From: Phyllobates terribilis
Lineage: Eukaryota
DNA length: 64,000 nucleotides
Assembly (NCBI RefSeq): GCF_046119375.1
Contig: NW_027362764.1
Coordinates: forward strand, 802,652,001-802,716,000
Reading direction: 5' to 3'
Of this stretch, positions 11,851 to 38,800 are shown one piece after another. Within the stretch, counting starts at the first letter, position 1. Every line of letters starts with the position of its first letter. Below the pieces are notes generated by a model. It saw nothing but the letters and a program-made list of their open reading frames with translations. It did not search any database and was not told where the DNA came from. The translations under genes were made by a program, and so were the position numbers.

Positions 11851-11868
11851 TGGCGTCACGAACAGGAT
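11851..11868 (+). promoter_or_regulatory. Primer binding site, probably tRNA-Ser(CGA)
   Basis: TGGCGTCACGAACAGGAT is complementary to the vertebrate tRNA-Ser(CGA) 3' end ATCCTGTTCGTGACGCCA as recalled (not searched). A second copy with one mismatch is at 13934-13951. Confidence 0.7.
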
Positions 11869-12231
11869 CACGTGGCCGCTGCAACGACGCCGTGTTTTGC
11901 CCGTTGCCACCAGGTACTGTGCGCCTTTATTCTGAACTGTGTATGTAAAGTTGTGGTGAAGGTTGCCGCCATTGTTGGGCCGTTGAGCGAGAAGAAGGGC
12001 GTAACCGCGGGAAAATTAGGGGCGTACCTGCAAAAGAGCGCGAAGCTTTGGACACGCCCCCCGCCTCAACGTCAAATCGGGAAGCGCCAGGTCCTGTTAG
12101 GAGCGTCGCGAAACGCGCTGACGTATGACGCAAGCGACGCAAGGTCCTGAAGACAACCGTCACCTTCGGAGCTGCGGCCTACCGGAAGAAAAACCAGAAG
12201 GTAGGCCACGGTTAACTAGGGGGGCGCTAAG

Positions 12232-12470
12232 ATGTCTGACGAGCAGCAGAACGCCGACCTGCCGGTCAACGTCCCTGAAGTTCAACCCGCGCTCGATGAT
12301 GAGCAGGCCGAAGCCGCCGCCCCACCAGCAGCGCCTGTAACACCTGTAATTCCTATGACTTTACTGTACATTCCTGGAGTAAAGTGGCTCCCCCAGTACA
12401 ACGGCAAACCAGATACCCTGTCCGGATTCAAACGGAAGATATGTGGTATCTTGGACATGTACTCCATGAC
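12232..12470 (+). pseudogene. Gypsy gag 5' fragment in an internally deleted element
   Basis: MSDEQQ..WLPQYNGKPDTLSGFKRKI follows the PBS/leader. The frame then runs into 3' sequence and a polypurine tract (AGGGGGGAA) at ~12778-12786. Confidence 0.6.
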
Positions 12471-12786
12471 AGGCAGGAGCAGCCGCCCCGTCAGCAGGAC
12501 CCATATCGCCTATCATACCCATGGCCCTGAATGTCCACAAGGTGGGGGAGGAGAGCAAACCCCCGCCATCTACGGCTGATGACCCGGCTGGGCCAGCCTA
12601 TCATGGACAGGTGCTTCCCCGGAAGGAGTACCATTATTGAACTGCTGAAAATGTTTTAAATGTTTTTGTTATGCAACGTTTAAGAAATGTGCCTCCCATA
12701 AAGGGAAGATTGTTCATGTTTCCTATTGTTATTGTTTTATAAAAATGTACTTCAGCCCGGGAGTGCTGAGTTTAACTAGGGGGGAA

Positions 12787-14279
12787 TGTGACGCCCAGCT
12801 GCGCTTGGTATCACAGATCCTAGAAGGGTGTATTGACGGATTCCTCCACAAGAGGCCCCCATAACCATTCACACATCTCCACCTTCCACCTCAGACCACC
12901 AGAGGGAGCCCGTTAGGGATAGATAAATAGGGAAGGTGGAGCCAGACAGCAGTTAGTTTGGTCTAGACTGGAGTCGACAGAGAGCAAACCTGTTGAGAGA
13001 GTTCCTGCAGTAAAGAAGCCTGAGAGAGGTCAGTCTGCAGTGGAGCACAGTCCAGACTCAGTTGTAGCTCAGAGTGGTGAGCTTTAGGTGTGCCGGCGCC
13101 ATAAGATAGGTGAAGCGTGGCGAGCTGCCGTTAGTGTAAGTAGCCTAGTGAGGGCCCGAGTAGGCCGAAGGCAAGAGGAGAGTTAGTACATAGGGGGCAG
13201 AGGAGCTTAACTAGCTCACCCCGAAGCAGTTACCGGACACCGGGTCCGAAGCTTACCGGGATCTCTATGACCCAGTAAGATATAACCGGAATCCCTGGGG
13301 AACTACAAGTCCCAGGATCACTAAAGAGCTGATACGTAACAGAGCCAGGAGACACTTAGGCCCCGCAAGCTGAGGAGCGTGTACTCCAAGAAAAGGCCCT
13401 ACCACAAGGTCAGCCAGCGCAGGACAGAGACAAAGTTAGGCCTAGCTCCAGGCAGGTCAGAAACTTACTACGCAGAAGCAAGAAACAGGAGGCCCAAAGC
13501 CCGCTCATTGGGGAGGATCCTGACATGCACCCTTCACCCTACAGTGCTCTGGGACGTGCCTGAATTTCCATCAGTAAAAGGTACTGAAGTGACTATCGCG
13601 TCTGTCCCTGTTCTTGCTCTGACCCGGCTCGGTCTCGCCTGTCCTGCATTCCCTGTTATTCACTGCCCTGAGGCCTAGCTCCACCTGTGGGGAGTTATAC
13701 CATCAAGCTGCCTTATCATCAGCCTCAGTGGACTGAGCAGCGCTGGTGATCCTCACCAGAAGCCACAGGTGGCGTCACAAACTCTTTTATAAACTTAACA
13801 AATTATCCACCCTTTTTAAGGAGAGACTCCAGGGTACGGGCCCGGGAGCCGACCACCGCGACATCCCTGAAGGCCAGGCTAAAGGCCCGGGTACCGAGTC
13901 ATCCCCCATTCCCCTGGACGAGTCATCTCCAACTGGCATCACGAACAGGATCACGTGCCCGCTGCAACGACGCCGTGTTTTGCCCGTTGCCACAGGGTAC
14001 TGTGCGCCTTTATTCTGAACTGTGTATGTAAAGTTGTGGTGAAGGTTGCCGCCATTGTTGGGCCGTTGAGCGAGAAGAAGGGCGTAACCGCGGGAAAATT
14101 AGAGGCGTACCTGCAAAAGAGCGCGAAGCTTCGGACACGCCCCCCGCCTCAACGTCAAATCGAGAAGCGCCAGATCCTGTAAGGAGCGTCGCGAAACGCG
14201 CTGACCTAGGACGCAAGCTATGCAAGGTCCTGAAGACAACCGTCACCTTCGGAGCTGCGGCCTACCGGAAGAAAAACCA
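12787..14279 (+). mobile_element. Gypsy LTR family A copy 2 (12787-~13931) followed by a second PBS and leader, truncated
   Basis: Near-identical to 10704-12196 at offset 2083. Starts with TG after the PPT. Confidence 0.85.
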
Positions 14280-17008
14280 TTTAGGTTGGTTGTGTACCTT
14301 TCCACCTGGAAAGTGTTCGGCAGCAGCCCACCTGGCTGCATCACGGACCCCGGGGTCTGTTGCATTCCATTTAAATAAAGTTGTCTGCAATCGCCCCCCT
14401 AACAGTATCTGAGCGCCAGGGTCTTGCCGAACATGGCCGACAATAAACAACTGCAGCGGTACATACAGCAACTGGAGGCCAGACTTAAATCTCTGGAACA
14501 AACTGCTCCGGTCGCTGATATTACTGCAGTAGCTACTCAGGCGGCTACTCTAGCAGCCAATATTATTAACTCAGCTGTGGTGAATTCTACAACCACTGCA
14601 AGTGCCCCATTACCCCATTTTGCTCTCCTGGAAAAATTTTCTGGAGATAGTAAACTTTGCAGGGGTTTTATTAACGTATGCTCCATTCATTTGGAGATAA
14701 TGGAGGCACGGTTCCCCTCCGAAAGAGCCAAAGTGGGTTATATCATTTCATTACTCTCACACAGGGTTCTGGAGTGGGCTACTCTTCTATGGGAGCGGAA
14801 CGACCCGATTGTAGTAAATGCGGGTCGATTCCTTAAGACTCTAAAAAGTGTTTTTCTGGGTCCTCAGGTCACGCATGATACGGCTCTTAAGCTTCTTGCG
14901 TTGGTCCAGGGTTCAGCCACCGCCAGCCACTATGCCGTCCAGTTCAGAACCCTAGCGGCTGAACTGGATTGGTCTGAGCGGTCGCTTATCCTGGTATTCT
15001 GGAGGGGTCTGGCTGGGCATATTAAAGATGCTTTATCTACTAGAGAAATCCCAACCTCTCTGGAGGAGTTAATATCTCTTGCTGACCGTATTGACTTGCG
15101 TCATGCGGAACACAAGTTAGAGCTGGAGGTTGCCAGACCTCAGTATCTGTTTGCACCATCCGCCTTTAGACCCATTTTCAAACCCAAGACACTCGACCCG
15201 GAGCCTAAGGCTACGGATGTACCCCGGTCTAAGTCTAGTTCCTCTCGTTCCCGTTCTGCACATATCTCGGAGCTCCCCGTAAATAAGGGTTCCAAGCAGT
15301 CGGTAAAACGAGTAGGTCTTACCACCGTTGGAGGAGGGGTATTAAATTCCGGGACTTCTTCCTCCAAATTATTACATAATGTGACTTTGTCCTTTGATAA
15401 AGCTGCAGTCACTGCCAAGGCGTGGGTGGATTCTGGTGCTGATGGCAATTTTTTATCATCTACGCTTGCCCAGAGGCATGCCATCCCTATTGAGTTACTC
15501 TCAAGACCAATGAACATTAGTATTGTCAATGGTTCACTCCTGGATGTAGAAATCACCCACCAGTCGATTCCTCTCACCATGTCATTTCCCCAGGGCCACC
15601 GGGAGGTTATTTCATTTCTTATTATTCCCGGTGGATTAGACGAGGTGTTATTGGGGCTCCCCTGGTTACGTTGTCATACTCCACACATTGACTGGAATAC
15701 GGGGAGAATATCTTCCTGGAGTGAGAATTGTGCATCTCAGTGTTTAGTCAAAGTCACCCGGAGGGTAGTCTCTGATCCTCCTATCATTGCGACATCCGGT
15801 ACAGATTCCTTGTCTGTTTCCAGGACCCGGGCCTTGTCAGATAATGTCGCAAAGAACTCTCAGGAAGAGAGGGTGGCTGCAGTGTCCTCCAACCCGGTTT
15901 GGTCAGGGAGGACGTTTGTTTCCCCTAATCTACAGAGTAAGGTGCTCTCCTGGGCTCATGCTCCTAAGACCAGAGCTTACCTGGGGGTCAAACGTACCAC
16001 TAAGTCCCTTCTACGGTCCTATTGGTGGCCCCAGTGGTGCCAGGAAGTCAAGGACTTTGTTCTCGCGTGTCCCGTCTGTGCGAGAGATAAATCTTTTCGC
16101 CAGAGACCGGCGGGTCCTTTCTCCCTGTCACCCATGAAGGATCCCACACATAGAGAACCAGTTGTCACTTCTTGCCATCCTGCTTCCCGTCCTAAAAGAG
16201 GGTACCCTGTACACCGGAGGGGTCACTGTTTCATGAATCCTCTCTGTGACCCGTTGGACCACATCACCAATGGCGCGTCGATGAGCAGGGCTTAGTCTTT
16301 AAAAGGCCCGCCCACAAACAAGGCGACGCGCTCAGATCATTTTTGCAAGTGTTGCTGTTGTGTGGACAAGTGTATTCCACGTGCTCCCTAGCTGCTCTCT
16401 CCGTGACCTGCCGATGCCAGAGTTCGCTCGGCTGATTATCACAGGTCACTCAGGCAGGCTTAGATTTGCTTAGGTAGGTAGCTACGTCTTGCAGCCTGGC
16501 TCAGCCAAAGGGGTCGCCTAACACCTCGAGCAGCCTGCAGACGCCCTGTCCACGGCTATCGCCTGTTAGCCACGTGGAGTAGTACCCTTCAGTCCGGTGG
16601 CACGCCGGCTGGAGGCTCGTGTACCCGTCGCGTAGTCACACACGCATCCTAGCGCCAATCCCTACAGCGTAGCGCCTGTATCGAAGACAGGGCTACTGCT
16701 TTTCCCCCGGTCGCACGTCTCCCTGCGGTTCTTGGCACTGAAACCCGCTCCGTGTGCATCAACACGGAGTGGTTCTTCAGTTAAGTAGGAGCTATCCAGG
16801 TCACTCTTCTCCCACGCAGTTAACGGAGATAGAGCGAACCGCTATACCCGTTCCTGTGTGCTGTAACACGGAAGGGTTTAACATTTAGGTTGGTTGTGTA
16901 CCTTTCCACCCGGAAAGTGTTCGGCAGCAGCCCACATGGCCGCATCGCGGACCCCGGGGTCGGTTGCGTTCCATTTAAATAAAGTTGTCTGCAACCGCCC
17001 CCCTAACA
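14280..17008 (+). mobile_element. Sushi-type gypsy non-autonomous element (5' LTR remnant 14280-14404; 3' LTR ~16208-17008)
   Basis: TTTAGGTTGGTTGTGTACC...CCCCCTAACA occurs at both ends. PPT-like AAAAGAGGG at ~16194-16202. Confidence 0.8.
14433..16295 (+). CDS. Gag-protease fused in frame to integrase N-terminal Zn-finger (RT/RNaseH/IN core deleted), ~620 aa
   Basis: EKFSGDSKLCRGFINVC..KVGYIISLL (gag), AWVDSGADGNF (aspartic protease), WAHAPK..YWWPQWCQEVKDFVLACPVCARDK (IN Zn-finger-like). Confidence 0.8.
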   Translation: MADNKQLQRYIQQLEARLKSLEQTAPVADITAVATQAATLAANIINSAVVNSTTTASAPLPHFALLEKFSGDSKLCRGFINVCSIHLEIMEARFPSERAKVGYIISLLSHRVLEWATLLWERNDPIVVNAGRFLKTLKSVFLGPQVTHDTALKLLALVQGSATASHYAVQFRTLAAELDWSERSLILVFWRGLAGHIKDALSTREIPTSLEELISLADRIDLRHAEHKLELEVARPQYLFAPSAFRPIFKPKTLDPEPKATDVPRSKSSSSRSRSAHISELPVNKGSKQSVKRVGLTTVGGGVLNSGTSSSKLLHNVTLSFDKAAVTAKAWVDSGADGNFLSSTLAQRHAIPIELLSRPMNISIVNGSLLDVEITHQSIPLTMSFPQGHREVISFLIIPGGLDEVLLGLPWLRCHTPHIDWNTGRISSWSENCASQCLVKVTRRVVSDPPIIATSGTDSLSVSRTRALSDNVAKNSQEERVAAVSSNPVWSGRTFVSPNLQSKVLSWAHAPKTRAYLGVKRTTKSLLRSYWWPQWCQEVKDFVLACPVCARDKSFRQRPAGPFSLSPMKDPTHREPVVTSCHPASRPKRGYPVHRRGHCFMNPLCDPLDHITNGASMSRA

Positions 17009-17009
17009 C

Positions 17010-18574
17010 TGATGATCGGATTATCTGACGATTGGAGCTTCATACAAAGGCTACGGGCATTGTTTGGTAATGACCGATCACTTCACCAAGTTTTCAGTGG
17101 TGATACCTACTAGGGATCAGACGGCAGAAACCGCAGCCAAGGCCATTTGTCAAGATTTCATTTGGATCTATGGGTGTCCGAAGCGGATACAGTCTGACAA
17201 AGGGGCCTGCTTCCAAGTGCGAGTCATGGATGAGTTATATCACATTTATGGGATCAACAGATCTCAAACAATGCCCTATTACCCCCAGGGAAATGGGGCA
17301 TGTGAGCGATTCAACCGAACCTTGTTGCAGATGTTACGGACATTGGAAGAGGACAAGAAAATTAAATGGCCCGAGTTCGTGTCCGAGTTGGTGTGGGTGT
17401 ATAATAATCGAGTTCATGCGACTACTGGTTACACACCCTATATGCTGCTGTTTGGAAGGAATGGACGAGAGATTACTGAGCTGGAGCTAGACTCAGAAGA
17501 TTCAGGTCCGTACAACAGTCCGAGTACCTGGATTCGAGAACACAGACGGCGGCTTCATACAGTGAGAAAACTGGTTGAGCAGAAATTTCAGGAAATAGAG
17601 GATACAGGGCGGCCCCCGATTTCAGTGAGCCCACTCCAACCAGGAGATCGTGTGTTAGTAAGGGCCAAACCGGTTGGGAGTATGCTAGACCATCATTGGG
17701 AAGCGGCACCATATCGAGTGGTGAAGCAGATCCATCCAAAGTATTCAGTCTACGAGGTTAGGCCTGAAGTGGGTGATGCCACGACATCTAGGGTGTTGCA
17801 CCGTAATATGCTACGACCCTGTTCGTCCGAAGCAGAGGACTGTAACAGAATTGAGCCTGCGGAAAAACTAACTGAAGTGCCACACATGGTGACCCTGGAA
17901 GACGAAGAAGGATGGGCTACAATGCAAATGAGCCCTTCAGTTCCGAGTGAGATACAAAATGGATCAGGAGGCGATTTACAATCTTCACTGCTTGATTTAT
18001 CAGATACCCCGGAATCACCTTTGCAGGAGGAACCCCGCAGAACCGAACGGGCTAATGCCGCTATCCCTCCTAACCGATATGCTCAACAGGAGTTTATCTG
18101 GTCTCAGATTCAACAGAAAACTGTGCTCACCTCTTGTCTGAACTTACGCTGCCTTGAAGGAGGCATCGATCTCGCAAAGAATCCACTCGCCCGGGGACTG
18201 GCGATCACAAAGGAGGGAGGAATGTAATAGAAGGAAAAAAGTCTTTCAGAGAATCAGTGCGAGATGTATGTAATAAGGAGAAAGAGCGCCATCTGGTGAG
18301 CATTTCAAGTTTGCACGCTGGACCTGGTCAGGTGACCTCCAGCAGAGGATTTCAAAATGTAACGGAGGAGCGCGCAGTGCCTGAGGTGATTTCGGCGCCA
18401 GACACAGAGAGAGACGTGACGCAGGCCGGACGCGCTGAAGGAACCAGCGAGAGAGACCGGGGTGAGAGACCCGTAAGGCAAGACGGGTGGCTGCCGGTGA
18501 ACGAGCGCGGGATTCAGCGAAGCGGTTCCTTGGGTGTCACTGCTAAGGAAGAGGACTGAGACTTGGATACGACA
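17010..18574 (+). mobile_element. Gypsy integrase core/C-terminus (ORF 17064-18227), PPT and start of 3' LTR (TG at 18223); probable continuation of 9450-10703
   Basis: VMTDHFTKF, RIQSDKG, YYPQGNGACERFNRTL (DDE), GDRVLV. AGGAGGGAGGAA precedes TGTAAT. The LTR is cut at TTAA 18575. Confidence 0.88.
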
Positions 18575-19669: not shown

Positions 19670-20670
19670 ATGGAGGGAGCAGGAAGGAGAGAGCAGGAAG
19701 GAGAGAGCAGGAAGGAGAGAGCAGGAAGGAGGGAGCAGGAAGGAGAGAGCAGGAAGGAGAGAGCAGGAAGGAGAGGAAGGAGGGAGCAGGAAGGAGGGAG
19801 CAGGAAGGAGAGAGCAGGAAGGAGAGAGCAGGGAGGAGAGAGCAGGGAGGAGAGAGCAGGGAGGAGAGAGCAGGAAGGAGAGAGCAGGAAGGAGAGAGCA
19901 GGAAGGAGAGAGGAGGAAGGAGAGAGGAGGAAGGAGGGAGCAGGAAGGAGGGAGCAGGAAGGAGGGAGCGGGAAGGAGAGAGCGGGAAGGAGAGAGCGGG
20001 AAGGAGGGAGCGGGAAGGAGAGAGCAGGAAGGAGGGAGCAGGAAGGAGAGAGGAGGAAGGAGGGAGCAGGAAGGAGGGAGCAGGAAGGAGAGAGGAGGAA
20101 GGAGGGAGCAGGAAGGAGAGAGCGGGATGGAGGGAGCAGGAAGGAGAGAGCAGGAAGGAGAGAGGAGGAAGGAGAGAGCAGGAAGGAGGGAGCACGAAGG
20201 AGAGAGCAGGAAGGAGGGAGCACGAAGGAGAGAGCAGGAAGGAGGGAGCAGGAAGGAGAGAGGAGGAAGGAGGGAGCAGGAAGGATAGAGGAGGAAGGAG
20301 AGAGCGGGAAGGAGGGAGCGGGAAGGAGAGAGCGGGAAGGAGAGAGCGGGATGGAGGGAGCAGGAAGGAGAGAGGAGGAAGGAGAGAGCAGGAAGGAGAG
20401 AGGAGGAAGGAGAGAGCAGGAAGGAGAGAGCACGAAGGATACAGCAGGAAGGAGGGAGCAGGAAGGAGAGAGCAGGAAGGAGAGAGGAGGAAGGAGAGAG
20501 GAGGAAGGAGGGAGCAGGAAGGAGAGAGCGGGAAGGAGGGAGCGGGAAGGAAAGAGCAGGGAGGAGAGAGCAGGGAGGAAGGAGAGAGCAGGGAGGAGGG
20601 AGCAGGGAGGAGAGGGCAGGAAGTAGAGGGCAGGATGGAGGGGGCAGGAAGGAGAGAGCAGGAAGGAGAG
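19670..20670 (+). repeat. Polypurine minisatellite (GGAAGGAGAGAGCA)n, 14-bp unit, ~1 kb
   Basis: About 70 variant units, almost no T on the + strand. Confidence 0.95.
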
Positions 20671-21249
20671 ATCAGGACGGTCTCCAGTGTCTGCTCACCC
20701 TCCATCCCCCACTGCAGCAGCCAGTAATCTGCAGGAGAAGCGACAACCTGAGCAGCAGCAGAGGCTGACGGACCCGAGCTGAGATCGCAGGATGGAGCGG
20801 ACGTCAATATATATTTACACTGGTCCTTTGTATCTCAGCTGCCGGTGATCGCTCTGAGAACAATGCGCCGATCTCTACATCACACACTTCCATGGTAGTT
20901 TCCGGGCTCATTGAACGTTCCCCAGGTGACGATTGTCCTGGTCAGAACAGATGTCCACGCTGCAGACGATCGCAGTTAGCAGAGCAGGTTGTTCTATACA
21001 CATTCCTGCTGCTCTGTACAGGGGAGAGGGGGCGGCGCAGAGTTCCGGGGTCTGCTGCAGTCTGCACTGATATCAGGGGACGTCATGTCGCAGAGCTCTG
21101 CGGGGGGAGGGGTCGCTCCATGTGGGATCTATAGAAACCAGTGCAGCCCGGAGTGTAGAGCGATGATGGGGAGATCTGTACAGCGCCGTGTACGAGACAT
21201 GGAGACTCAGGGAGCGGAAGTGTGTCATGTGGCCAGGTAGTCGGTCACT

Positions 21250-21801
<552 letters not shown>

Positions 21802-21830: not shown

Positions 21831-21872
21831 GGCTCTTTTCAGAGCCACCAAATCCTCCAAGACGAGCTGAGA
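21831..21872 (+). terminator. Histone 3' stem-loop and HDE
   Basis: GGCTCTTTTCAGAGCC 21831-21846, then purine-rich AAGACGAGCTGA. Confidence 0.95.
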
Positions 21873-23370: not shown

Positions 23371-23772
<402 letters not shown>

Positions 23773-23805: not shown

Positions 23806-23845
23806 GGCTCTTCTAAGAGCCACCACCCCGTCACTTCAAGAGCTG
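23806..23845 (+). terminator. H2B stem-loop and HDE
   Basis: GGCTCTTCTAAGAGCC 23806-23821; AAGAGCTG 23838-23845. Confidence 0.93.
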
Positions 23846-24607
23846 CTCCTCACCTGCCTCCTGTAGCTCCATGTCCCGTCACTGCAAGAGCTGCTCCTCA
23901 CCTCCCTCCTGTAGCTCCATGTCCCGTCACTGCAAGAGCTGCTCCTCACCTGCCTCCTGTAGCTCCATGTCCCGTCACTGCAAGAGCTGCTCCTCACCTC
24001 CCTCCTGTAGCTCCATGTCCCGTCACTGCAAGAGCTGCTCCTCACCTGCCTCCTGTAGCTCCATGTCCCGTCACTACAAGAGCCGCTCCTCACCTTCCTC
24101 CTGTAGCTCCATGTCCCGTCACTACAAGAGCTGCTCCTCACCTGCCTCCTGCAGCTCCATGTTCAGTGACAAGAGCTGCTCCTCACCTGCCTCCTGTAGC
24201 TCCATGTCCAGTCACTACAAGAGCTGCTCCATGTCCCGTCACTACAAGAGCTACTCCTCACCAGCCTCCTGTAGCTCCATGTCCCGTCACTACAAGAGCT
24301 GCTCCTCACCAGCCTCCTGTAGCTCCATGTCCCGTCACTACAAGAGCTGCTCCTCACCTGCCTCCTGTAGCTCCATGTCCTGTCACTACAAGAGCCTCTC
24401 CTCACCTGCCTCCTGTAGCTCCATGTCCCGTCGCTACAAGAGCTGCTCCTCACCTGCCTCCTGTAGCTCCATGTCCCGTCACTACAAGAGCCGCTCCTCC
24501 CCTGCCTCCTGTAGCTCCATGTCCCGTCACTACAAGAGCTGCTCCTCACCTGCCTCCTGTAGCTCCATGTCCCGTCACTACAAGAGCTGCTCCTCACCTG
24601 CCTCCTG
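23826..24607 (+). repeat. 48-bp tandem array containing the H2B HDE (~17 units)
   Basis: Unit CCCGTCACTRCAAGAGCTGCTCCTCACCTGCCTCCTGTAGCTCCATGT. Confidence 0.95.
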
Positions 24608-25134
24608 GCGGGTACGATGTGGAGAAGAATAACAGCCGCCTGAAGTTGGCCGTCAGGTCTCTGGTCACCAAGGGCGCCCTGCTGCAGGTGAAGGGCAGCG
24701 GCGCCTCCGGCTCCTTCAAGCTGAACAAGAAGCAGGAGACTAAGGACAAACCGGCCAAGAAGAAGCCGGCGGCTGCGGCCAAACCCAAGAAACCCGCAGC
24801 CAAGAAAGCGGCCAAATCCCCAAAGAAGCTCAAGAAGGCTCCGACCGCAGCTAAGAAAAGCCCGAAAAAAGCCAAGAAGCCCGCAGCAGCCGCGGCCAAG
24901 AAAGCGGCCAAATCCCCAAAGAAGCTCAAGAAGGCTCCGACCGCGGCCAAGAAAAGCCCGAAAAAGGTCAAGAAGCCCGCAGCAGCCGCAGCCAAGAGCC
25001 CCAAGAAGCCGAAGGCCGCTCCGAAGCCCAAGAAGATGACGAAGAGCACGGCTAAGAAGGCGGCCAAACCCAAAGCTGCCAAGAGTCCAGCTAAGAAGGC
25101 GACTAAAGCCAAGAAGCCCGCGGCTAAGAAATAA
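24608..25134 (+). pseudogene. H1: Histone H1, 5'-truncated (no promoter, ATG, N-tail or first half of the globular domain)
   Basis: Starts at [42 protein letters not shown]. Intact K/A/P-rich tail and TAA. Joined directly to the 48-bp array. Confidence 0.9.
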
Positions 25135-25164
25135 GCCAAAGCCGTCCTGTTATTACACCACAAA

Positions 25165-25205
25165 GGCTCTTATCAGAGCCACTACCTTGTCCCTGCAGAG
25201 CTGTA
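25165..25205 (+). terminator. H1 stem-loop and HDE
   Basis: GGCTCTTATCAGAGCC 25165-25180; AGAGCTGTA from 25197. Confidence 0.95.
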
Positions 25206-25665
25206 TGATCAGTGCCACCACCTTGTTCCTGCAGAGCTGTATGATCAGTGTCATCACCTTCTCCCTGCAGAGCTGTATGATCATTGTCACCGCCTTCTCC
25301 CTGCAGAGCTGTATGATCAGTGCCACCACCTTCTCCCCGCAGAGCTGTATGATCAGTGCCACCACCTTGTCCCTGCAGAGCTGTATGATCAGTGTCACCG
25401 CCTTCTCCCTGCAGAGCTGTATGATCAGTGCCACCACCTTGTCCCTGCAGAGCTGTATGATCAGTGCCATCACCTTGTCCCTGCAGAGCTGTATGACCAG
25501 TGTCACCACCTTGTCCCCTCAGAGCTGTATGATCAGTGCCACCACCTTGTCTCCGCAGAGCTGTATGATCAGTGCCACCACCTTGTCTCCGCAGAGCTGT
25601 ATGATCAGTGTCACCACCTTGTCTCCGCAGAGCTGTATGATCAGTGCCACCACCTTGTCCCTGCT
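25181..25665 (+). repeat. 36-bp tandem array containing the H1 HDE (13 units)
   Basis: Unit CCTTGTCCCTGCAGAGCTGTATGATCAGTGCCACCA; AGAGCTGTA every 36 bp from 25197 to 25629. Confidence 0.95.
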
Positions 25666-25960
25666 GTACAGCGCTGTATCTGCTGTGCAATCTCATATAA
25701 TCGCCTTCCAGATAACAATGGAATCATTCACATTTGGAGAAATAACTAAACCGAATCAATTTCTAAAACAGAAATGAGACCGAAGAATCAGATCTGAGGA
25801 GCAAAGGCTGAAATAAAAGTCACTGAGCTTCTATCAGAAATGAGCAGTACAGTATTAAAAGATCTGATCTGTGAAGAAGCCAGAAGCAGCCGAAGCTTTC
25901 TCACAACCTGCTATTTACCCTGTGAGAGACCCGGGCTGTGAACAAGACACAGGAGCAGCC

Positions 25961-26054
25961 ACAGCTCTGATGTAGATGGGGTGGTGGCGGGAGCAGAAGC
26001 ACTGAGGAGCAGATCACTTGGCGCTGCTCATCCTCCACACAACCAAAGGCTCTT
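25961..26054 (-). pseudogene. Relic H2B 3' end lacking the hairpin
   Basis: Reverse complement of 25998-26025 is identical to H2B 23761-23788, followed by GCCACCACCCC and HDE AGAGCTGT. Confidence 0.8.
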
Positions 26055-26559: not shown

Positions 26560-28184
26560 CAGTACAGACCAAAAGTTTGGACACACCTTCTCATTTAAAG
26601 ATTTTTCTGTATTTTCATGACTTTGAAAATTGTACATTCGCACTGAAGGCATCAAAACTATGAATTACCACATGTGGAATTATATACTTAACAAAAAAGT
26701 GTGAAACAACTGAAAATATGTCTTATATTCTAGGTTCTTCACAGTAGCCACCTTTTGCTTTGATGACTGCTTTGTACACTCTTGGCATTCTCTTGATGAG
26801 CTTCAAGAGGTAGTCACCGGAAATGGTCTTCCAACAATCTTGAAGGAGTTTCCAGAGATGCTTAGCACTTGTTGGCCCTTTTGCCTTCACTCTGCGGTCC
26901 AGCTCATCCCAAACCATCTCGATTGGGTTCAGGTCTGGTGACTGTGGAGGCCAGGTCACCTGGCGTAGCACCCCATTACTCTCCTTCTTGGTCAAATAGC
27001 CCTTACACAGCCTGGAGGTGTGTTTGGGGTTATTGTCCTGTTGAAAAATAAATGATGGTCCAACTAAACGCAAACCGGATGGAATAGCATGCCGCTGCAA
27101 GATGCTGTGGTAGCCATGCTGGTTCAGTATGCCTTCAATTTTGAATAAATCCCCAACAGTGTAACCAGCAAAGCACCCCCACACCATCACACCTCCTCCT
27201 CCATGCTTCACGGTGGGAACCAGGCATGTAGAGTCCATCCGTTCACCTTTTCTGCGTCGCACAAAGACACGGTGGTTGGAACCAAAGATCTCAAATTTGG
27301 ACTCATCAGACCAAAGCACAGATTTCCACTGGTCTAATGTCCATTCCTTGTGTTCTTTAGCCCAAACAAGTCTCTTCTGCTTGTTGCCTGTCCTTAGCAG
27401 TGGTTTCCTAGCAGCTATTTTACCATGAAGGCCTGCTGCACAAAGTCTCCTCTTAACAGTTGTTGTAGAGATGTGTCTGCTGCTAGAACTCTGTGTGGCA
27501 TTGACCTGGTCTCTAATCTGAGCTGCTGTTAACCTGTGATTTCTGAGGCTGGTGACTCGGATAAACTTATCCTCAGAAGCAGAGGTGACTCTTGGTCTTC
27601 CTTTACTGGGGCGGTCCTCATGTGAGCCAGTTTCTTTGTAGCGCTTGATGGTTTTTGCAACTGCACTTGGGGACACATTCAAAGTTTGCCCAATTTTTCG
27701 GACTGACCGACCTTCATTTCTTAAAGTAATGATGGCCACTCTTTTTTCTTTACTTAACTGCTTTTTTCTTGCCATAATACAAATTCTAACAGTCTATTCA
27801 GTAGGACTATCAGCTGTGTATCCACCAGACTTCTGCACAACACAACTGATGGTCCCAACCCCATTTATAAAGCAAGAAATCCCACTTATTAAACCTGACA
27901 GGGCACACCTGTGAAGTGAAAACCATTTCCGGTGACTACCTCTTGAAGCTCATCAATGCCAAGAGTGTGCAAAGCAGTCATCAAAGCAAAAGGTGGCTAC
28001 TTTGAAGAACCTAGAATATAAGACATATTTTCAGTTGTTTCACACTTTTTTGTTAAGTATATAATTCCACATGTGTTAATTCATAGTTTTGATGCCTTCA
28101 GTGTGAATGTACAATTTTCAAAGTCATGAAAATACAGAAAAATCTTTAAATGAGAAGGTGTGTCCAAACTTTTGGTCTGTACTG
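26560..28184 (-). mobile_element. Full-length Tc1-like DD38E transposon (Intruder-type), TA TSD, ~265-bp TIRs
   Basis: TA|CAGTACAGACCAAAAGTTTGGACAC ... GTGTCCAAACTTTTGGTCTGTACTG|TA; 1625 bp. Confidence 0.95.
26723..27775 (-). CDS. Tc1-family transposase, intact, 350 aa, DD38E
   Basis: GRPR linker, WSDESKF, QQDNNPKH, SPDLNPIE. 38 residues counted between the second D and the E. Confidence 0.93.
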   Translation of the reverse strand: MARKKQLSKEKRVAIITLRNEGRSVRKIGQTLNVSPSAVAKTIKRYKETGSHEDRPSKGRPRVTSASEDKFIRVTSLRNHRLTAAQIRDQVNATQSSSSRHISTTTVKRRLCAAGLHGKIAARKPLLRTGNKQKRLVWAKEHKEWTLDQWKSVLWSDESKFEIFGSNHRVFVRRRKGERMDSTCLVPTVKHGGGGVMVWGCFAGYTVGDLFKIEGILNQHGYHSILQRHAIPSGLRLVGPSFIFQQDNNPKHTSRLCKGYLTKKESNGVLRQVTWPPQSPDLNPIEMVWDELDRRVKAKGPTSAKHLWKLLQDCWKTISGDYLLKLIKRMPRVYKAVIKAKGGYCEEPRI

Positions 28185-28529: not shown

Positions 28530-30945
28530 CAGCTGTCTGCTTGACCCAATCCCATCCCACCTCATGCCTAACCTTACTATAGTCTTCATCTCAACCCTAA
28601 TCCACCTCTTCAACCTGTCACTAACAACTGGTGTCTTCCCCTCATGCTTCAAACGTGCCTCAATCACACTTATCCTCAAAAAGCCCTCCCTTGACCCATC
28701 ATCTCTGACTAGCTATTGCCCCATATCACTTCTCCCATATGCTTCAAAACTACTGGAACAACTGGACCTGTCAACTGTCTACAACACAGTAGACCATGCC
28801 CGCTTAATAGAGACTTGGCCCTATCTTGGATCTTCTCATACCTAACAGACAGGACATTCAGTGTCTTCCAATCACATACCATAGGGCCCCTTCTCTTCTC
28901 CATCTACACCTTTGACCTGAGACACTCTTAGAGTCTCGCGGTTTTCAGTATCACCTCTATGCTGATGACACACAGATCTACCTCTCTGGACCTGATATCT
29001 CCTCCCTACTAACCAAAATCCCACAATGTCTGTCTGCTATTTTATCCTTCTTCTCTGTGAGATTTCTAAAACTTAACATGGATAAAACTGAATTCATCAC
29101 CTTTCCACCATCTCACTCAACCACCCCAACAGACCTATCCATCAACGACAATGGCTGCTCACTCTCCCCAGACCCATGAGATCGCTGCCTCGGGGTGACC
29201 CTGGACTCTGATCTCAAGTTCAAACCACATATCCAAGCCCTTTCCACTTCCTGCCGACTCCAACTCAAAAATATCTCCCGGATCCGCACATTCCTCAACC
29301 ACGAATCTGCAAAAACACTAGTGCACGCCCTCATCATCTCCCGCCTTGACTACTGCAACCTCCTGCTCTGTGGCCTCCCATCCAACACTCTTGCACCCCT
29401 CCAATCTATCCTAAACTCTGCTGCTCGACTAATCAACCTGTCCCCCCGCTATTCCCCGGCCCCTCCTCTCTGTCAATCTCTTCACTGACTCCCCATTGCC
29501 CAAAGTCTCCAGCTCAAAATCTTAACCACAGCATACAAAGCCATCCACAACCTGTCTCCTCCATACATCTGTGACTTAGTCTCCCGATACTTACCTGCAC
29601 GCAACCTCCGACCCTCACAAGATCTCCTTCTCTACTCCCCTCTAATCTCCTCCCACAATTACATACAAGATCTCTCCCGTGCATCCCCCCTCTACCCCAA
29701 CATATCAGACCCTCACCTACCGTGGAAACCTATAAAAGGAACCTGAAGACCCTCCTCTTCCGACAAGCCTACAACCTGCAGTAACCACCGCTCCACCATA
29801 CCGCTGCACGACCAGCTCTACCCTCACCTACTGTATCCTCACCCATCCCTTGTATATTGTGAGCCCTCGCGGGCAGGGTCCTCGCTCCACCATACCGCTG
29901 CACGACCAGCTCTACCCTCACCTACTGTATCCTCACCCATCCCTTGTAGACTGTGAGTCCTCGCGGGCAGGGTCCTCGCTCCACCATACCGCTGCACGAC
30001 CAGCTCTACCCTCACCTACTGTATCCTCACCCATCCCCTGTAGACTGTGAGTCCTCGCGGGCAGGGTCCTCGCTCCACCATACCGCTGCACGACCAGCTC
30101 TACCCTCACCTACTGTATCCTCACCCATCCCCTGTAGACTGTGAGTCCTCGCGGGCAGGGTCCTCGCTCCACCATACCGCTGCACGACCAGCTCAGCCCT
30201 CACCTACTGTATCCTCACCCATCCCTTGTAGACTGTGAGTCCTCGCGGGCAGGGTCCTCGCTCCACCATACCGCTGCACAACCAGCTCTACCCTCACCTA
30301 CTGTATCCTCACCCATCCCTTGTAGACTGTGAGTCCTCGCGGGCAGGGTCCTCGCTCCACCATACCGCTGCATGACCAGCTCTACCCTCACCTACTGTAT
30401 CCTCACCCATCCCCTGTAGACTGTGAGTCCTCGCGGGCAGGGTCCTCGCTCCACTACACCGCTGCACGACCAGCTCTACCCTCACCTACTGTATCCTCAC
30501 CCATCCCTTGTAGACTGTGAGTCCTCACGGGCAGGGTCCTCGCTCCACTACACCGCTGCACGACCAGCTCTACCCTCACCTACTGTATCCTCACCCATCC
30601 CTTGTAGACTGTGAGTCCTCACGGGCAGGGTCCTCTCTCCACCATACCGCTGCACGACCAGCTCTACCCTCACCTACTGTATCCTCACCCATCCCTTGTA
30701 GACTGTGAGTCCTCACGGGCAGGGTCCTCGCTCCACCATACCGCTGCACGACCAGCTGTACCCTCACCTACTGTATCCTCACCCATCCCCTGTAGACTGT
30801 GAGCCCTCGCGGGCAGGGTCCTCGCTCCTCCTGGACCAGTCGCTGACTCGTTTTTGTTCAAGATTATTGTAAATGTTTCTGCTATTTATACCCCCTTTTT
30901 TCACATGTAAAGCGCCATGGAATAAATGGCGCTATAATAATAAAA
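28530..30945 (+). mobile_element. L2-type LINE, 5'-truncated and degenerate, with expanded 3' UTR
   Basis: LFNLSLTTGVFPSCFKRA..LKKPSLDP, YADDTQIYL (TATGCTGATGACACACAGATCTAC), LIISRLDYCN; 3' end GTAAAGCGCCATGGAATAAATGGCGCTATAATAATAAA. Confidence 0.88.
29789..30828 (+). repeat. 94-bp tandem array (11 units) in the L2 3' UTR
   Basis: ORF copies recur every 94 bp. The unit includes the L2 3' motif TGTAGACTGTGAGYCCTCGCGGGCAGGG. Confidence 0.95.
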
Positions 30946-31904: not shown

Positions 31905-31945
31905 CAGCTTCTCCACTGTACATGTGGGGGGCTCTGATAAGAGCC
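31905..31945 (-). terminator. H4 stem-loop and HDE
   Basis: Minus strand GGCTCTTATCAGAGCC (31930-31945), then GGAGAAGCTGTG. Confidence 0.93.
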
Positions 31946-34039: not shown

Positions 34040-35835
34040 TACCGAGGACCAGCTGACGGTACTGGAACCCGGATGGATAGCAGAAGGTACAAGAGCCAAT
34101 GGAACTACCGAGGACCAGCTGATGTTACTGGAACTCGGTTACTAAGCAGGAGGTACCTGTGCCAGAAAGCACTACCAAGGACCAGCAGACGTTGGTGGAA
34201 CTTGGATACCGAGAAGGAGGCACCTAATCCAAAGGCACTGCCGAGAACCAGCTGACGGTACTGGAACCCGGATGGGTAGCAGAAGGTACCCATGTAAAAA
34301 AAAAGTTCAAGGCCGCGAGCCGGCCGCAGTTACCAAAACCCACAGTCCTACAGAGGGTGCTTGTCCTATTGGCACTATGGAACCAGCCTTCATTGCCAGA
34401 TCCCGCAGCCCACATAGGAGTCACCTAAACTGCAGGCACCATAGAGTCGGCTAACCCGACCGCAACACGACAGGACAACGCATTGGAGGCAAAGTGACGT
34501 TGACACTACCCGGAAACAGCTGGCGTGCTGGAACCAGGCTGGGCAGGAGGGAGTACCCGTGCCAAAGACACTGCCGAGAACCAGCTGACGGTACTGGAAC
34601 CCGGATGGGTAGCAGAAGATACAAGAGCAAATGGAACTACCGAGGACCAGCTGACGGTACTGGAACCCGGATGGGTAGCAGAAGGTACAAGAGCCAATGG
34701 AACTACCGAGGACCAGCTGATGTTACTGGAACTCGGTTACTAAGCAGGAGGTACCTGTGCCAGAAAGCACTACCAAGGACCAGCAGACGTTGGTGGAACT
34801 TGGATACCGAGAAGGAGGCACCTAATCCAAAGGCACTGCCGAGAACCAGCTGACGGTACTGGAACCCGGATGGGTAGCAGAAGGTACCCATGTAAAAAAA
34901 AAGTTCAAGGCCGCGAGCCGGCCGCAGTTACCAAAACCCACAGTCCTACAGAGGGTGCTTGTCCTATTGGCACTATGGAACCAGCCTTCATTGCCAGATC
35001 CCGCAGCCCACATAGGAGTCACCTAAACTGCAGGCACCATAGAGTCGGCTAACCCGACCGCAACACGACAGGACAACGCATTGGAGGCAAAGTGACGTTG
35101 ACACTACCCGGAAACAGCTGGCGTGCTGGAACCAGGCTGGGCAGGAGGGAGTACCCGTGCCAAAGACACTGCCGAGAACCAGCTGACGGTACTGGAACCC
35201 GGATGGGTAGCAGAAGATACAAGAGCAAATGGAACTACCGAGGACCAGCTGACGGTACTGGAACCCGGATGGGTAGCAGAAGGTACAAGAGCCAATGGAA
35301 CTACCGAGGACCAGCTGATGTTACTGGAACTCGGTTACTAAGCAGGAGGTACCTGTGCCAGAAAGCACTACCAAGGACCAGCAGACGTTGGTGGAACTTG
35401 GATACCGAGAAGGAGGCACCTAATCCAAAGGCACTGCCGAGAACCAGCTGACGGTACTGGAACCCGGATGGGTAGCAGAAGGTACCCATGTAAAAAAAAA
35501 GTTCAAGGCCGCGAGCCGGCCGCAGTTACCAAAACCCACAGTCCTACAGAGGGTGCTTGTCCTATTGGCACTATGGAACCAGCCTTCATTGCCAGATCCC
35601 GCAGCCCACATAGGAGTCACCTAAACTGCAGGCACCATAGAGTCGGCTAACCCGACCGCAACACGACAGGACAACGCATTGGAGGCAAAGTGACGTTGAC
35701 ACTACCCGGAAACAGCTGGCGTGCTGGAACCAGGCTGGGCAGGAGGGAGTACCCGTGCCAAAGACACTGCCGAGAACCAGCTGACGGTACTGGAACCCGG
35801 ATGGGTAGCAGAAGGTACAAGAGCCAATGGAACTG
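34040..35835. repeat. 598-bp tandem repeat (~3 copies) built from ~60-bp subunits
   Basis: Identical ORFs at 34224, 34822, 35420 (period 598). Confidence 0.95.
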
Positions 35836-35849
35836 CCGAGAACCAGCTG

Positions 35850-38800
35850 GCGGTGCTGGAGCCCAGGGTAAATACTAAAAACAGAAGAGCCAGAGGTGTA
35901 TTTGGAGGAGGTTTTAAATCCGTACTACAGTGGATGTGGACAAAGCAGGAGAATTTGCCGGACACACAGCTGGGGATCAGCTGACGTTACTGAATCCCAA
36001 TAACACTGGAGCAAGCGTTGACTGTGCAGACGGCACTTCTGAGCAGCAACTAGCGGTATTGGAGCCCAGGGTAAATACTAAAAACGGAGGAGCCAGAGGT
36101 GTAATTGGAGCAAGTTTTAAATAAGTAGCACAGTGAATATGGACAGAGCAGGAGAAATTGCCGTGAACACAGCAGGGGAACAGCTGACGTTACCGAACCC
36201 CAATAACACCGCAGCAAGTGTTGACTGTGCAGACGGCACTTCTGAGCAGCAACTAGCGGTATTGGAGCCCAGGGTAAATACTAAAAACGGAGGAGCCAGA
36301 GGTGTAATTGGAGCAAGTTTTAAATAAGTAGCACAGTGAATATGGACAGAGCAGGAGAAATTGCCGTGAACACAGCAGGGGAACAGCTGACGTTACCGAA
36401 CCCCAATAACACCGCAGCAAGTGTTGACTGTGCAGACGGCACTTCCGAGCGCCAACTGGCGGTGCTGGAGCCCAGGGATAAGAATGAAAACAGAGGAGCC
36501 AGAGGTGTAATTCGAGCAACTTTAAAATCTGTAGTAGTGAGAATGTGGACAGAGCAGGAGACATTGCCGTCCGCACAGCAGGGGAACAGCTGACGTTACT
36601 GAACCCCAATAACACGGCAGCAAGTGTTGACTGTGCAGACAGCACTTCCGAGCGCCAACTGGCGGTGTTGGAGCCCAGGGTAAATACTAAAAACGGAGGA
36701 GCCAGAGGTGTAATTGGAGCAAGTTTTAAATAAGTAGCACAGTGAATATGGACAGAGCAGGAGAAATTGCCGTGAACACAGCAGGGGAACAGCTGACGTT
36801 ACTGAACCCCAATAACATGGTAGCAAGTGTTGACTGTGCAGACGGCACTTCCGAGCGCCAACTGGCGGTGCTGGAGCCCAGGGATAAGAATGAAAACAGA
36901 GGAGCCAGAGGTGTAATTCGAGCAACTTTAAAATCTGTAGTAGTGAGAATGTGGACAGAGCAGGAGAAATTGCCGTCCGCACAGCAGGGGAACAGCTGAC
37001 GTTACTGAACCCCAATAACACGGCAGCAAGTGTTGACTGTGCAGACACACTTCCGAGCGCCAACTGGCGGTGTTGGAGCCCAGGGTAAATACTAAAAACG
37101 GAGGAGCCAGAGGTGTAATTGGAGCAAGTTTTAAATAAGTAGCACAGTGAATATGGACAGAGCAGGAGAAATTGCCGTGAACACAGCAGGGGAACAGCTG
37201 ACGTTACTGAACCCCAATAACATGGTAGCAAGTGTTGACTGTGCAGACGGCACTTCCGAGCGCCAACTGGCGGTGCTGGAGCCCAGGGATAAGAATGAAA
37301 ACAGAGGAGCCAGAGGTGTAATTCGAGCAACTTTAAAATGTGTAGTACAGTGGATGTGGACAAAGCAGGAGAAATTGCCGTCCGCACAGCAGGAGAACAG
37401 CTGACGTTACTGAACCCCAATAACACGGCAGCAAGTGTTGACTGTGCAGACGGCACTTCCGAGCGCCAACTGGCGGTGCTGGAGCCCAGGGATAAGAATG
37501 AAAACAGAGGAGCCAGAGGTGTAATTCGAGCAACTTTAAAATGTGTAGTACAGTGGATGTGGACAAAGCAGGAGAAATTGCCGTCCGCACAGCAGGAGAA
37601 CAGCTGACGTTACTGAACCCCAATAACACGGCAGCAAGTGTTGACTGTGCAGACGGCACTTCCGTGCGCCAACTGGCGGTGTTGGAGCTCAGGGATAATA
37701 CTGAAAACAGAGGAGCCAGAGGTGTAATTGGAGCAACTTTAAAATCTGTAGTAGTGAGAATGTGGACAGAGCAGGAGAAATTGCCGTCCGCACAGCAGGG
37801 GAACAGCTGACGTTACTGAACCCCAATAACATGGTAGCAAGTGTTGACTGTGCAGACAGCACTTCCGAGCGCCAACTGGCGGTGCTGGAGCCCAGGGATA
37901 AGAATGAAAACAGAGGAGCCAGAGGAGTAATTGGAGCAACTTTAAAATGTGTAGTACAGTGGATGTGGACAAATCAGGAGAAATTGCCGTCCGCACAGCA
38001 GGAGAACAGCTGACGTTACTGAACCCCAATAACACGGCAGCAAGTGTTGACTGTGCAGACGGCACTTCCGAGCGCCAACTGGCGGTGCTGGAGCCCAGGG
38101 ATAAGAATGAAAACAGAGGAGCCAGAGGTGTAATTGGAGCAACTTTAAAATCTGTAGTAGTGAGAATGTGGACAGAGCAGGAGAAATTGCCGTCCGCACA
38201 GCAGGGGAACAGCTGACGTTACTGAACCCCAATAACATGGTAGCAAGTGTTGACTGTGCAGACAGCACTTCCGAGCGCCAACTGGCGGTGCTGGAGCCCA
38301 GGGATAAGAATGAAAACAGAGGAGCCAGAGGTGTAATTGGAGCAACTTTAAAATCTGTAGTAGTGAGAATGTGGACAGAGCAGGAGAAATTGCCGTCCGC
38401 ACAGCAGGGGAACAGCTGACGTTACTGAACCCCAATAACACGGCAGCAAGTGTTGACTGTGCAGACAGCACTTCCGAGCGCCAACTGGCGGTGTTAGAGC
38501 CCAGGGTAAATACTAAAAACGGAGGAGCCAGAGGTGTAATTGGAGCAAGTTTTAAATAAGTAGCACAGTGAATATGGACAGAGCAGGAGAAATTGCCGTG
38601 AACACAGCAGGGGAACAGCTGACGTTACTGAACCCCAATAACATGGTAGCAAGTGTTGACTGTGCAGACGGCACTTCCGAGCGCCAACTGGCGGTGCTGG
38701 AGCCCAGGGATAAGAATGAAAACAGAGGAGCCAGAGGTGTAATTCGAGCAACTTTAAAATGTGTAGTACAGTGGATGTGGACAAAGCAGGAGAAATTGCC

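What the first reader, a model, noticed from the sequence alone, without database searches (positions are those of the whole stretch)
23826..25665. U7-binding HDE independently amplified into tandem arrays after two histone genes
Seen: directly after the H2B hairpin a 48-bp unit carrying AAGAGCTG repeats about 17 times. Directly after the H1 hairpin an unrelated 36-bp unit carrying AGAGCTGTA repeats 13 times. In both, the first unit is the gene's own HDE, 16 nt past the stem. The H1 unit also keeps ATCAGTGCCACCACC, a copy of the hairpin 3' arm plus cleavage site without the 5' arm. Established: the HDE pairs with the U7 snRNA 5' end (..UACAGCUCUU..) to direct histone pre-mRNA cleavage, and amphibian oocyte histone loci show read-through transcription. 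Inference: two separate expansions anchored on the same functional element suggest fail-safe cleavage/termination arrays, U7 snRNP-concentrating or decoy RNA, or a mutational hotspot at histone 3' ends.
Basis: partly seen in the sequence, partly recalled or inferred. Interest (0 to 1): 0.8.

Follow-up and report, generated by a model that had tools for sequence, protein, structure and literature searches.

The report
Repeats grown from histone RNA-cutting signals
Behind a histone H2B gene and a broken histone H1 gene of a poison-type frog, the short signal that tells the cell where to cut histone RNA has twice been copied into a tandem repeat; the repeats are real, recur elsewhere and seem undescribed, but they look like drifting repeat DNA rather than working signals.

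Summary
A 48-bp unit runs 17 times (23827-24607), starting 5 nt after the H2B stem-loop. A 36-bp unit runs 13.7 times (25172-25664), starting in the loop of the H1 stem-loop. In each array the first unit is the gene's own histone downstream element (HDE), 16 nt past the stem.

- The H1 is a promoterless fragment, equivalent to residues 71-215, fused directly to the H2B array.
- 23% of the window is tandem repeat.
- No downstream unit has a stem-loop.

Array starts within 20 nt of 2 of 4 stem-loops are still non-random (P about 2e-4).

This scan has already met both repeat families on other DNA of this genome, with about 16 to 1,200 copies. Annotated proteins show traces of the H1 type in Ranitomeya imitator and of the H2B type in Anomaloglossus baeobatrachus.

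Evidence against working U7 sites:
- Each unit pairs with U7 over only 8-9 bp and lacks a stem-loop. Published assays show such substrates are barely cleaved or not at all.
- 4 of 17 H2B cores are mutated.
- HDE conservation is inconsistent: H1 P=0.014, H2B not significant, pooled P=0.13.

Best reading (0.65): neutral minisatellites born at a fragile histone 3' end. Transcription could not be tested.

The parts
23393..23772 (+). Histone H2B coding sequence. A run of 137 N (23493-23629) is masked by the operators and was left as is. An octamer and a TATA box lie upstream.
   Evidence: ORF and translation. H2B motifs LAHYNKR and EIQTAVR. Sequence read.
23806..23821 (+). H2B 3' stem-loop.
   Evidence: Pattern scan. 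Rfam RF00032 at 32.1 bits, E 1.6e-6.
23838..23845 (+). The H2B gene's own HDE core, AAGAGCTG, 16 nt past the stem. It lies in the first unit of the array.
23827..24607 (+). 48-bp minisatellite of 17 units. It includes one 45-bp unit, one 27-bp unit and a truncated last unit. The sense strand is C-rich (GC skew -0.43).
   Evidence: TRF. Units in register. Column statistics. Composition.
24596..24612 (+). Junction between the H2B array and the middle of the H1 coding sequence. The array ending CTGCCTCCTG resembles the H1 codons inferred for L-S-A-G. This suggests a microhomology-mediated deletion.
   Evidence: Sequence. H1 alignment starts at residue 71. The normal H1 residues LSAGG are seen in P0001 and P0008. 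The DNA of the intact parent was not seen, so this is an inference.
24610..25134 (+). 5'-truncated histone H1: the end of the globular domain plus the whole C-terminal tail and the stop codon. It has no promoter and no start codon. It carries an internal 96-bp duplication.
   Evidence: BLASTP 47/48 identity to residues 71-118 of P0002. Homologue list. TRF 96-bp x2.1.
25165..25180 (+). H1 3' stem-loop.
   Evidence: Rfam RF00032 at 31.9 bits, E 2.1e-6.
25197..25205 (+). The H1 gene's own HDE core, AGAGCTGTA, 16 nt past the stem.
25172..25690 (+). 36-bp minisatellite: 13.7 clean units to 25664, then one decayed unit. A unit runs from the stem-loop loop through the 3' arm, cleavage region and spacer to the HDE.
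   Evidence: TRF. Units in register. Distal decayed unit.
25935..26026 (-). Inverted fragment of another H2B 3' end: the last codons, the 3' UTR and a single HDE (AGAGCTG, 25968-25962). The stem-loop is precisely missing. It shows the unamplified state of an H2B flank.
   Evidence: Reverse complement compared with the H2B 3' end. Flank table.
26027..26054 (+). Histone-type 3' UTR ending in the 5' half of a stem-loop. It is broken in the loop and followed by AT-rich foreign sequence.
   Evidence: Half stem-loop hit at 26045. Sequence.
21831..21846 (+). H3 stem-loop, an internal control. It has a single HDE and no array.
   Evidence: Rfam 35 bits, above gathering. TRF shows no array there.
31930..31945 (-). 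H4 stem-loop, an internal control. It has a single HDE and no array directly after it.
   Evidence: TRF.

Best explanation
These are two minisatellites, each born by tandem duplication of the 3'-processing region of a replication-dependent histone gene in a dendrobatoid (poison-type) frog.

- The H2B family copies the 48 nt from 5 nt past the stem-loop to 27 nt beyond the HDE.
- The H1 family copies the 36 nt from the stem-loop loop to just past the HDE.

Every unit therefore carries one U7-complementary core. None carries a stem-loop.

Most likely history, with each step marked:
1. The founding duplications arose by replication slippage or microhomology-mediated repair. The site was structurally fragile: a palindromic stem-loop at the termination zone of genes transcribed during S phase (inferred).
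2. The arrays grew and shrank by unequal exchange. Subfamilies of units and decayed edge units show this.
3. They were carried along as the histone cluster multiplied. They now stand behind many H2B and H1 copies with very different copy numbers (from earlier notes of this scan, not re-tested here).
4. In this copy a later deletion fused the H2B array to the middle of H1.

I judge the downstream units to be selectively neutral DNA, not working cleavage or U7-binding sites.
For: - Arrays, unit registers and first-unit identity with the genes' own signals.
- Array starts lie next to stem-loops more often than chance allows, P about 2e-4, even though 22.8% of the window is tandem repeat.
- Four of six stem-loop sites in the window carry a structural change within about 6 nt. 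These are an array start in the loop, an array start 5 nt after the stem, a stem-loop broken in the loop and a stem-loop precisely deleted.
- No array unit matches the stem-loop model.
- H2B HDE cores are mutated in 4 of 17 units. Core columns vary as much as the rest (2/8 against 7/40), and the longest invariant block of that unit (17 nt) is not the HDE.
- U7 duplexes are weak, -14 to -15 kcal/mol. Published thresholds: 9 bp plus a stem-loop gave under 5% cleavage, and the substrate without the stem-loop was not cleaved (PMC7026596).
- The H1 here is a promoterless fragment.
- Both families recur in this genome with about 16 to 1,200 copies.
- There are traces in other genera. The R. imitator H1 model P0001 reads through into a stem-loop, an HDE and a second unit. 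The Anomaloglossus model P0004 contains a peptide that needs 1 nt change from 'HDE core + start of next H2B-type unit'; 20,000 random 24-mers need at least 5.
- Satellites derived from multigene families are known in frogs, for example PcP190 from 5S rDNA.
Against: - In the H1 array of this window the HDE core never varies: 0 of 9 columns against 12 of 27, one-sided P=0.014. The 13-nt invariant run has P about 0.02. This is what selection on the U7 site would give.
- Both families seem to be shared across dendrobatoid genera, so they are old or recurrent.
- The hotspot mechanism is inferred. A 6-bp stem is short for a fragile palindrome.
- Transcription, U7 binding and this species' own U7 sequence were not examined.
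- The cross-species evidence is read from protein models, not from DNA.
Confidence: 0.65

Rival explanations
1. The arrays work at the RNA level. Read-through transcripts expose many U7-complementary sites. These could give back-up cleavage and termination, hold U7 snRNP at the histone locus, or buffer U7.
For: - Every H1 unit keeps the cleavage region and the HDE at the native spacing.
- The H1 core is invariant in 13 units.
- Two different histone genes amplified the same functional element.
- Traces in other genera suggest persistence.
- Amphibian oocyte histone loci carry U7-rich bodies and show read-through into neighbouring satellite DNA (PMC12046345; PMC5615363).
- HDE-like motifs in human LTR12 repeats are reported to respond to U7 (bioRxiv 10.1101/2023.08.25.554787).
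Against: - Units have no stem-loop and only 8-9 contiguous bp with U7. That is far below the 15-16 bp needed for SLBP-independent cleavage.
- H2B cores decay. The pooled conservation test is not significant, P=0.13.
- The H1 array here follows a dead gene.
- Copy number ranges over two orders of magnitude between loci.
- U7 is scarce, about 500-fold below spliceosomal snRNPs. Highly expressed arrays would be costly.
- Earlier follow-ups on the long arrays reported no selection on the motif (not re-tested here).
Confidence: 0.13
2. Chance. In a genome this rich in minisatellites, two arrays merely happen to lie beside histone 3' ends, with no special mutational or functional link.
For: 22.8% of the window is tandem repeat, with 18 arrays of at least 200 bp in 61 kb. 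Many have unrelated units and several belong to transposable elements.
Against: - Both arrays start within 6 nt of a stem-loop, and each uses the gene's own signal as its first unit. P is about 2e-4 under uniform placement.
- Further breakpoints sit at stem-loops in the same window.
Confidence: 0.05
3. Assembly artefact. The arrays, their copy numbers, or the join between the H2B array and H1 were produced by mis-assembly of a repetitive cluster.
For: The window's first 3,052 bases recur without a single mismatch 60,948 bases later. That could be a false duplication. The array-H1 join could not be checked with reads.
Against: - Units carry ordered variant subfamilies and decayed edges, as real arrays do.
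- The same families stand in many other pieces of the genome.
- Protein models from two other assemblies show the same families.
- DNA runs of several studies hold words of the stretch.
- The join lies in a plausible microhomology.
Confidence: 0.04

Closest known systems
Satellite DNA derived from a multigene-family element, for example PcP190 from 5S rDNA in hyloid frogs (Vittorazzi et al. 2011, as cited in PMC12191414 and PMC12692304)
   Same: A piece of a tandemly repeated, highly expressed gene family was duplicated in tandem. It expanded to arrays of very different size and persists across related frogs.
   Different: - The source here is a 36-48 nt non-coding RNA-processing signal, not the gene body.
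- Arrays stay attached to the 3' end of the parent gene.
- Two genes of the cluster did this separately.
- I found no paper describing a histone-HDE-derived repeat.
Canonical histone 3'-processing signal (stem-loop plus HDE, read by SLBP and U7 snRNP)
   Same: The first unit of each array is such a signal. Its core lies 16 nt past the stem and is complementary to the U7 5' end.
   Different: Downstream units lack the 5' arm of the stem, so SLBP has no binding site. The pairing is short. Cleavage at these units is not expected from published assays and was not tested.
Newt histone clusters embedded in satellite 1, with read-through transcription on lampbrush loops (Diaz et al. 1981 and Gall et al. 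1981, as cited in PMC5615363)
   Same: Amphibian histone genes followed by tandem repeats. Failure to terminate there would put repeat RNA into nascent transcripts.
   Different: The newt satellite is not reported to derive from the processing signal. No transcription data exist for this locus.
HDE-like motifs in human HERV1/LTR12 repeats said to be repressed through U7 snRNA (bioRxiv 10.1101/2023.08.25.554787)
   Same: U7-complementary motifs multiplied within repetitive DNA outside functional histone 3' ends.
   Different: Those motifs are dispersed with a retroelement and are proposed to act on transcription through NF-Y. Here they are head-to-tail copies of a gene's own signal.

Membership tests
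Functional histone 3'-processing signal (stem-loop + HDE) | A 6-bp stem and 4-nt loop with conserved flanks, upstream of the element. | tested here: not met
   Met only for the first unit of each array (Rfam RF00032 at 32.1 and 31.9 bits). No other unit gives any hit at E up to 10. H1 units keep only the 3' arm.
Functional histone 3'-processing signal (stem-loop + HDE) | A purine-rich core complementary to the U7 snRNA 5' end, at a fixed distance from the cleavage site. | tested here: inconclusive
   There are 8 (H2B) or 9 (H1) contiguous complementary bases. Duplex energies are -14 to -15 kcal/mol, against a random mean of -7.8. The U7 sequence was the general vertebrate one, taken from memory and consistent with the CUCUUU core in PMC7026596. 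This frog's own U7 was not available.
Functional histone 3'-processing signal (stem-loop + HDE) | U7- and SLBP-dependent cleavage in vivo or in extract. | not testable with these tools
No run on record as RNA holds the stretch.
Minisatellite / satellite DNA | Head-to-tail units of 10-100 bp with high identity between units. | tested here: met
   TRF: 48 bp at 93-95% matches, and 36 bp at 92% matches with no indels.
Minisatellite / satellite DNA | Unit subfamilies, and edges more diverged than the centre, as unequal exchange produces. | tested here: met
   H2B units 2-5 carry CTGC and units 6-17 carry CTAC. The gene-proximal unit is unique in both arrays. A decayed unit ends the H1 array.
Minisatellite / satellite DNA | Copy number varies between loci. 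| not tested
   Known only from earlier notes of this scan: about 16, 20, 48, 320 and 1,200 H1-type copies, and 28, 29, 62 and 180 H2B-type copies.
Satellite derived from a multigene-family element (PcP190 type) | The unit is homologous to part of a functional member of the family. | tested here: met
   The first unit is the gene's own 3' flank, and later units differ from it at 2 positions. An unamplified H2B flank with one HDE lies at 25935-26026.
Satellite derived from a multigene-family element (PcP190 type) | Present in related species. | tested here: inconclusive
   Read only from protein models. The tail of R. imitator P0001 matches the stem-loop, HDE and second unit (pairwise E 7e-12). 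The junction peptide of Anomaloglossus P0004 fits two H2B-type units. DNA could not be fetched. The window's own species is not known to me.

The most novel reading that the evidence does not exclude
The HDE arrays are used. In oocytes, and perhaps in S-phase cells, polymerase reads through the histone 3' end. The nascent array RNA, with tens to more than a thousand U7-complementary sites, then tethers or nucleates the U7-rich histone locus body at these loci, or buffers free U7 snRNP. On this reading dendrobatoid frogs have turned a processing signal into a scaffold RNA.
Probability: 0.07. Interest if true: 0.8.

Novelty: new variant of a known kind. Interest (0 to 1): 0.42.

Why it matters
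If the neutral reading is right, this is a clean, datable example of how a satellite is born from a short functional RNA signal. It also suggests that histone 3' ends (a palindromic stem-loop, S-phase transcription, a termination zone) are prone to tandem duplication. That idea can be tested genome-wide.

For people who study histone mRNA processing, the arrays are a natural series of substrates, from one to more than 1,000 HDEs, with and without stem-loops. They bear on two questions: how much pairing U7 needs without SLBP, and whether extra sites titrate a scarce snRNP.

For annotators, these arrays and the fused gene fragments explain the chimeric H2B-H1 and read-through H1 gene models seen in several frog assemblies.

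Tried and rejected
- Reads. I therefore have no evidence on transcription, on 3' ends or on the array-H1 join.
- Other frogs' DNA. DNA around H1 genes of Phyllobates terribilis, Ranitomeya variabilis, R. imitator and Anomaloglossus could not be fetched because the files are too large.
- Two Logan contigs with H1 (L001, L002). They come from unknown AT-rich, non-frog-like genomes and show one HDE and no array. They are of no use beyond the trivial.
- Metagenome scans. Exact scans for the unit junctions of both arrays gave 0 matches.
- Protein searches with array reading frames. Two word-index searches found nothing. The all-library search found only unrelated proline-rich minisatellite ORFs.
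- Inverted repeats in the arrays. None were found.
- RNA folding of array pieces. HDE cores can pair with neighbouring units, but z-scores of -2.4 to +0.7 are unremarkable.
- A special relation between the two units. Rejected: other histone flanks of the window are just as similar to each other.
- Literature searches for HDE-derived repeats or poison-frog histone satellites. Nothing was found. Subscription journals are not covered.

Full report
**What is there.** The window holds a degenerate, transposon-invaded histone cluster.
- H3 lies on the plus strand (21391-21801, stem-loop 21831-21846).
- H2B lies on the plus strand (23393-23772, with 137 masked N that I left alone; stem-loop 23806-23821).
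- An H1 piece lies on the plus strand (24610-25134, stem-loop 25165-25180).
- H4 lies on the minus strand (32292-31978, stem-loop 31945-31930).
- I found no H2A.

Rfam's histone stem-loop model matches the three plus-strand stem-loops at 35, 32.1 and 31.9 bits (gathering score 34; E at most 2e-6).

**The arrays.** Tandem Repeats Finder gives a 48-bp array at 23827-24607 and a 36-bp array at 25172-25664.
- Put in register, the H2B array has 17 units, including one of 45 bp, one of 27 bp and a last unit cut short. Thirteen units have the exact core AAGAGCTG and four have a mutated core.
- The H1 array has 13 exact AGAGCTGTA cores spaced exactly 36 bp apart, a partial 14th unit, and a decayed further unit reaching about 25690.
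- In both arrays the first unit is the gene's own downstream element, 16 nt past the stem.
- The H1 unit begins in the stem-loop loop, so it repeats the 3' arm and the cleavage region but not the 5' arm.
- In both arrays the gene-proximal unit differs from all later units at two positions.

- The H1 is not a gene. Its translation aligns from residue 71 of a 215-aa Phyllobates terribilis H1 (47 of 48 identical), so the promoter and 70 codons are missing.
- The fragment abuts the last H2B unit directly. The join lies where the unit (CTGCCTCCTG) resembles the H1 codons expected for L-S-A-G. This points to a microhomology-mediated deletion. It is an inference, because I could not see an intact parent copy.
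- The window is 22.8% tandem repeat, with 18 arrays of at least 200 bp.
- No downstream unit scores as a stem-loop, even at E up to 10.

**Is the link to the processing signal more than chance?** Yes. With the window's own array density, the probability that two of four stem-loops have an array starting within 20 nt is about 2e-4.

The same window holds two more rearrangements exactly at stem-loops:
- an inverted H2B 3' fragment (25935-26026, minus strand), in which the 22-nt stem-loop is precisely missing while a single HDE follows;
- a histone-type 3' UTR broken in the stem-loop loop (26027-26054).

So four of six stem-loop sites carry a structural change within about 6 nt.

The two units are independent products, because their periods and boundaries differ. 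They share only the spacer (11 of 16 positions) and the core. That is no more than other histone flanks of this window share.

**Recurrence.** Earlier notes of this scan report both families on other DNA of the same genome.
- H1-type arrays have about 16, 20 and 48 copies, or fill blocks of 11.7 kb and 43.8 kb.
- H2B-type arrays have 28, 29 and about 62 copies, or fill an 8.7-kb block of the same 48-bp unit.
- The follow-ups on the three long blocks judged them neutral.

I could not re-test those claims.

**Independent traces in other assemblies.** I found these through annotated proteins.
- The Ranitomeya imitator H1 model P0001 reads through its stop codon. Its tail spells the stem-loop, then the HDE, then the unit junction, then a second unit in a shifted frame. 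That second unit ends in the same RRAV-stop as the window's units. The pairwise BLASTP E-value against the window's translation is 7e-12.
- The Anomaloglossus baeobatrachus model P0004 joins the H2B N-terminus to a 5'-truncated H1 through a short peptide. The peptide's eight residues QELPITTS need one nucleotide change from 'HDE core plus start of the next H2B-type unit'. In comparison, 20,000 random 24-mers of the window need at least five changes.
- These two species belong to Dendrobatidae and Aromobatidae.
- The window's own species is unknown to me. Its H1 is 92-95% identical to all of these H1 proteins.
- Runs labelled as other organisms hold 26-33% of the sampled words of the H2B stretch. 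The coding part alone would give about 16%. I could not lay those runs to confirm this.

**Do the units work?** Several lines argue that they do not.
- Pairing with the vertebrate U7 5' end is 8 or 9 contiguous bp. Predicted duplexes of -14 to -15 kcal/mol lie near the 1% tail of random 40-mers of the window. They are no stronger than the single HDEs of H3 and H4. The U7 sequence was taken from memory and is consistent with PMC7026596.
- That paper reports four relevant results: 15-16 bp duplexes are cleaved without SLBP; a 9-bp duplex with a normal stem-loop gives under 5% product; the same substrate without the stem-loop is not cleaved by endogenous U7; and U7 is about 500-fold rarer than spliceosomal snRNPs.
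- Conservation is inconsistent. In the H1 array the 9 core columns never vary, against 12 of 27 other columns (one-sided P=0.014; invariant run of 13, P about 0.02). In the H2B array the core varies as much as the rest (2 of 8 against 7 of 40), and the longest invariant block (17 nt) lies outside the HDE. The pooled test gives P=0.13.
- Array RNA can pair HDE cores with neighbouring units, but the folding z-scores are unremarkable.
- The H1 array in this window follows a dead gene.

**Verdict.** The arrays are real, non-random in position, recurrent and apparently undescribed. Literature searches found nothing on HDE-derived repeats.

The closest known kind is a satellite derived from a multigene family, such as PcP190 from 5S rDNA in frogs.

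The best-supported reading is neutral minisatellites born at a fragile histone 3' end and spread with the cluster (0.65). That they are repeats, and that the H2B cores decay, is shown. The fragile-site mechanism is inferred.

A function in U7 handling remains possible (about 0.13). The invariant H1 core, the old age of the families, and the known U7-rich bodies and read-through at amphibian histone loci all leave room for it.

Noticed in passing
window 1-3052 and 60949-64000: The two stretches are identical at all 3,052 positions at an offset of 60,948 bases. This is either a very young segmental tandem duplication of about 61 kb or a false duplication in the assembly.
   Followed up: partly
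window 25935-26054: An inverted H2B 3' fragment lacks exactly its stem-loop but keeps one HDE. Next to it, on the other strand, a histone 3' UTR is broken in the stem-loop loop. Together they look like a complex rearrangement centred on the palindrome.
   Followed up: partly
window 24166-25134: One open frame runs from the H2B array into the H1 fragment. Both array periods (48 and 36) are multiples of three, so several frames stay open through the arrays. I saw no sign that this frame is a gene.
   Followed up: partly
P0004, P0022, P0008, P0005 (proteins from other frog assemblies): Gene models in Anomaloglossus, Phyllobates and Ranitomeya are chimeras: an H2B start spliced to H1, an H1 fragment spliced to H3, and a frameshifted H1. 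This suggests that truncated and fused histone fragments are common in dendrobatoid clusters and mislead annotation.
   Followed up: partly
window 24794-24997: A 96-bp duplication (2.1 copies, 94% matches) inside the H1 C-terminal tail adds 32 residues. These are absent from the H1 proteins of related frogs.
   Followed up: no
window 35832-39320, 19672-20677, 29789-30828: Other large arrays are present: a 203-bp satellite x17, a 14-bp repeat x72 about 700 bp upstream of H3, and a 94-bp x11 array. The last appears to be the tail of a LINE-type element lying 1.1 kb downstream of H4.
   Followed up: no
window 26723-27775 (-), 39385-42777 (-), 7583-18227 (+): The cluster holds an intact-looking 350-aa Tc1/mariner-type transposase ORF, an 1,130-aa hAT-type ORF, and reverse-transcriptase and integrase ORFs of an LTR element. 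This histone cluster copy is heavily invaded by mobile elements.
   Followed up: no
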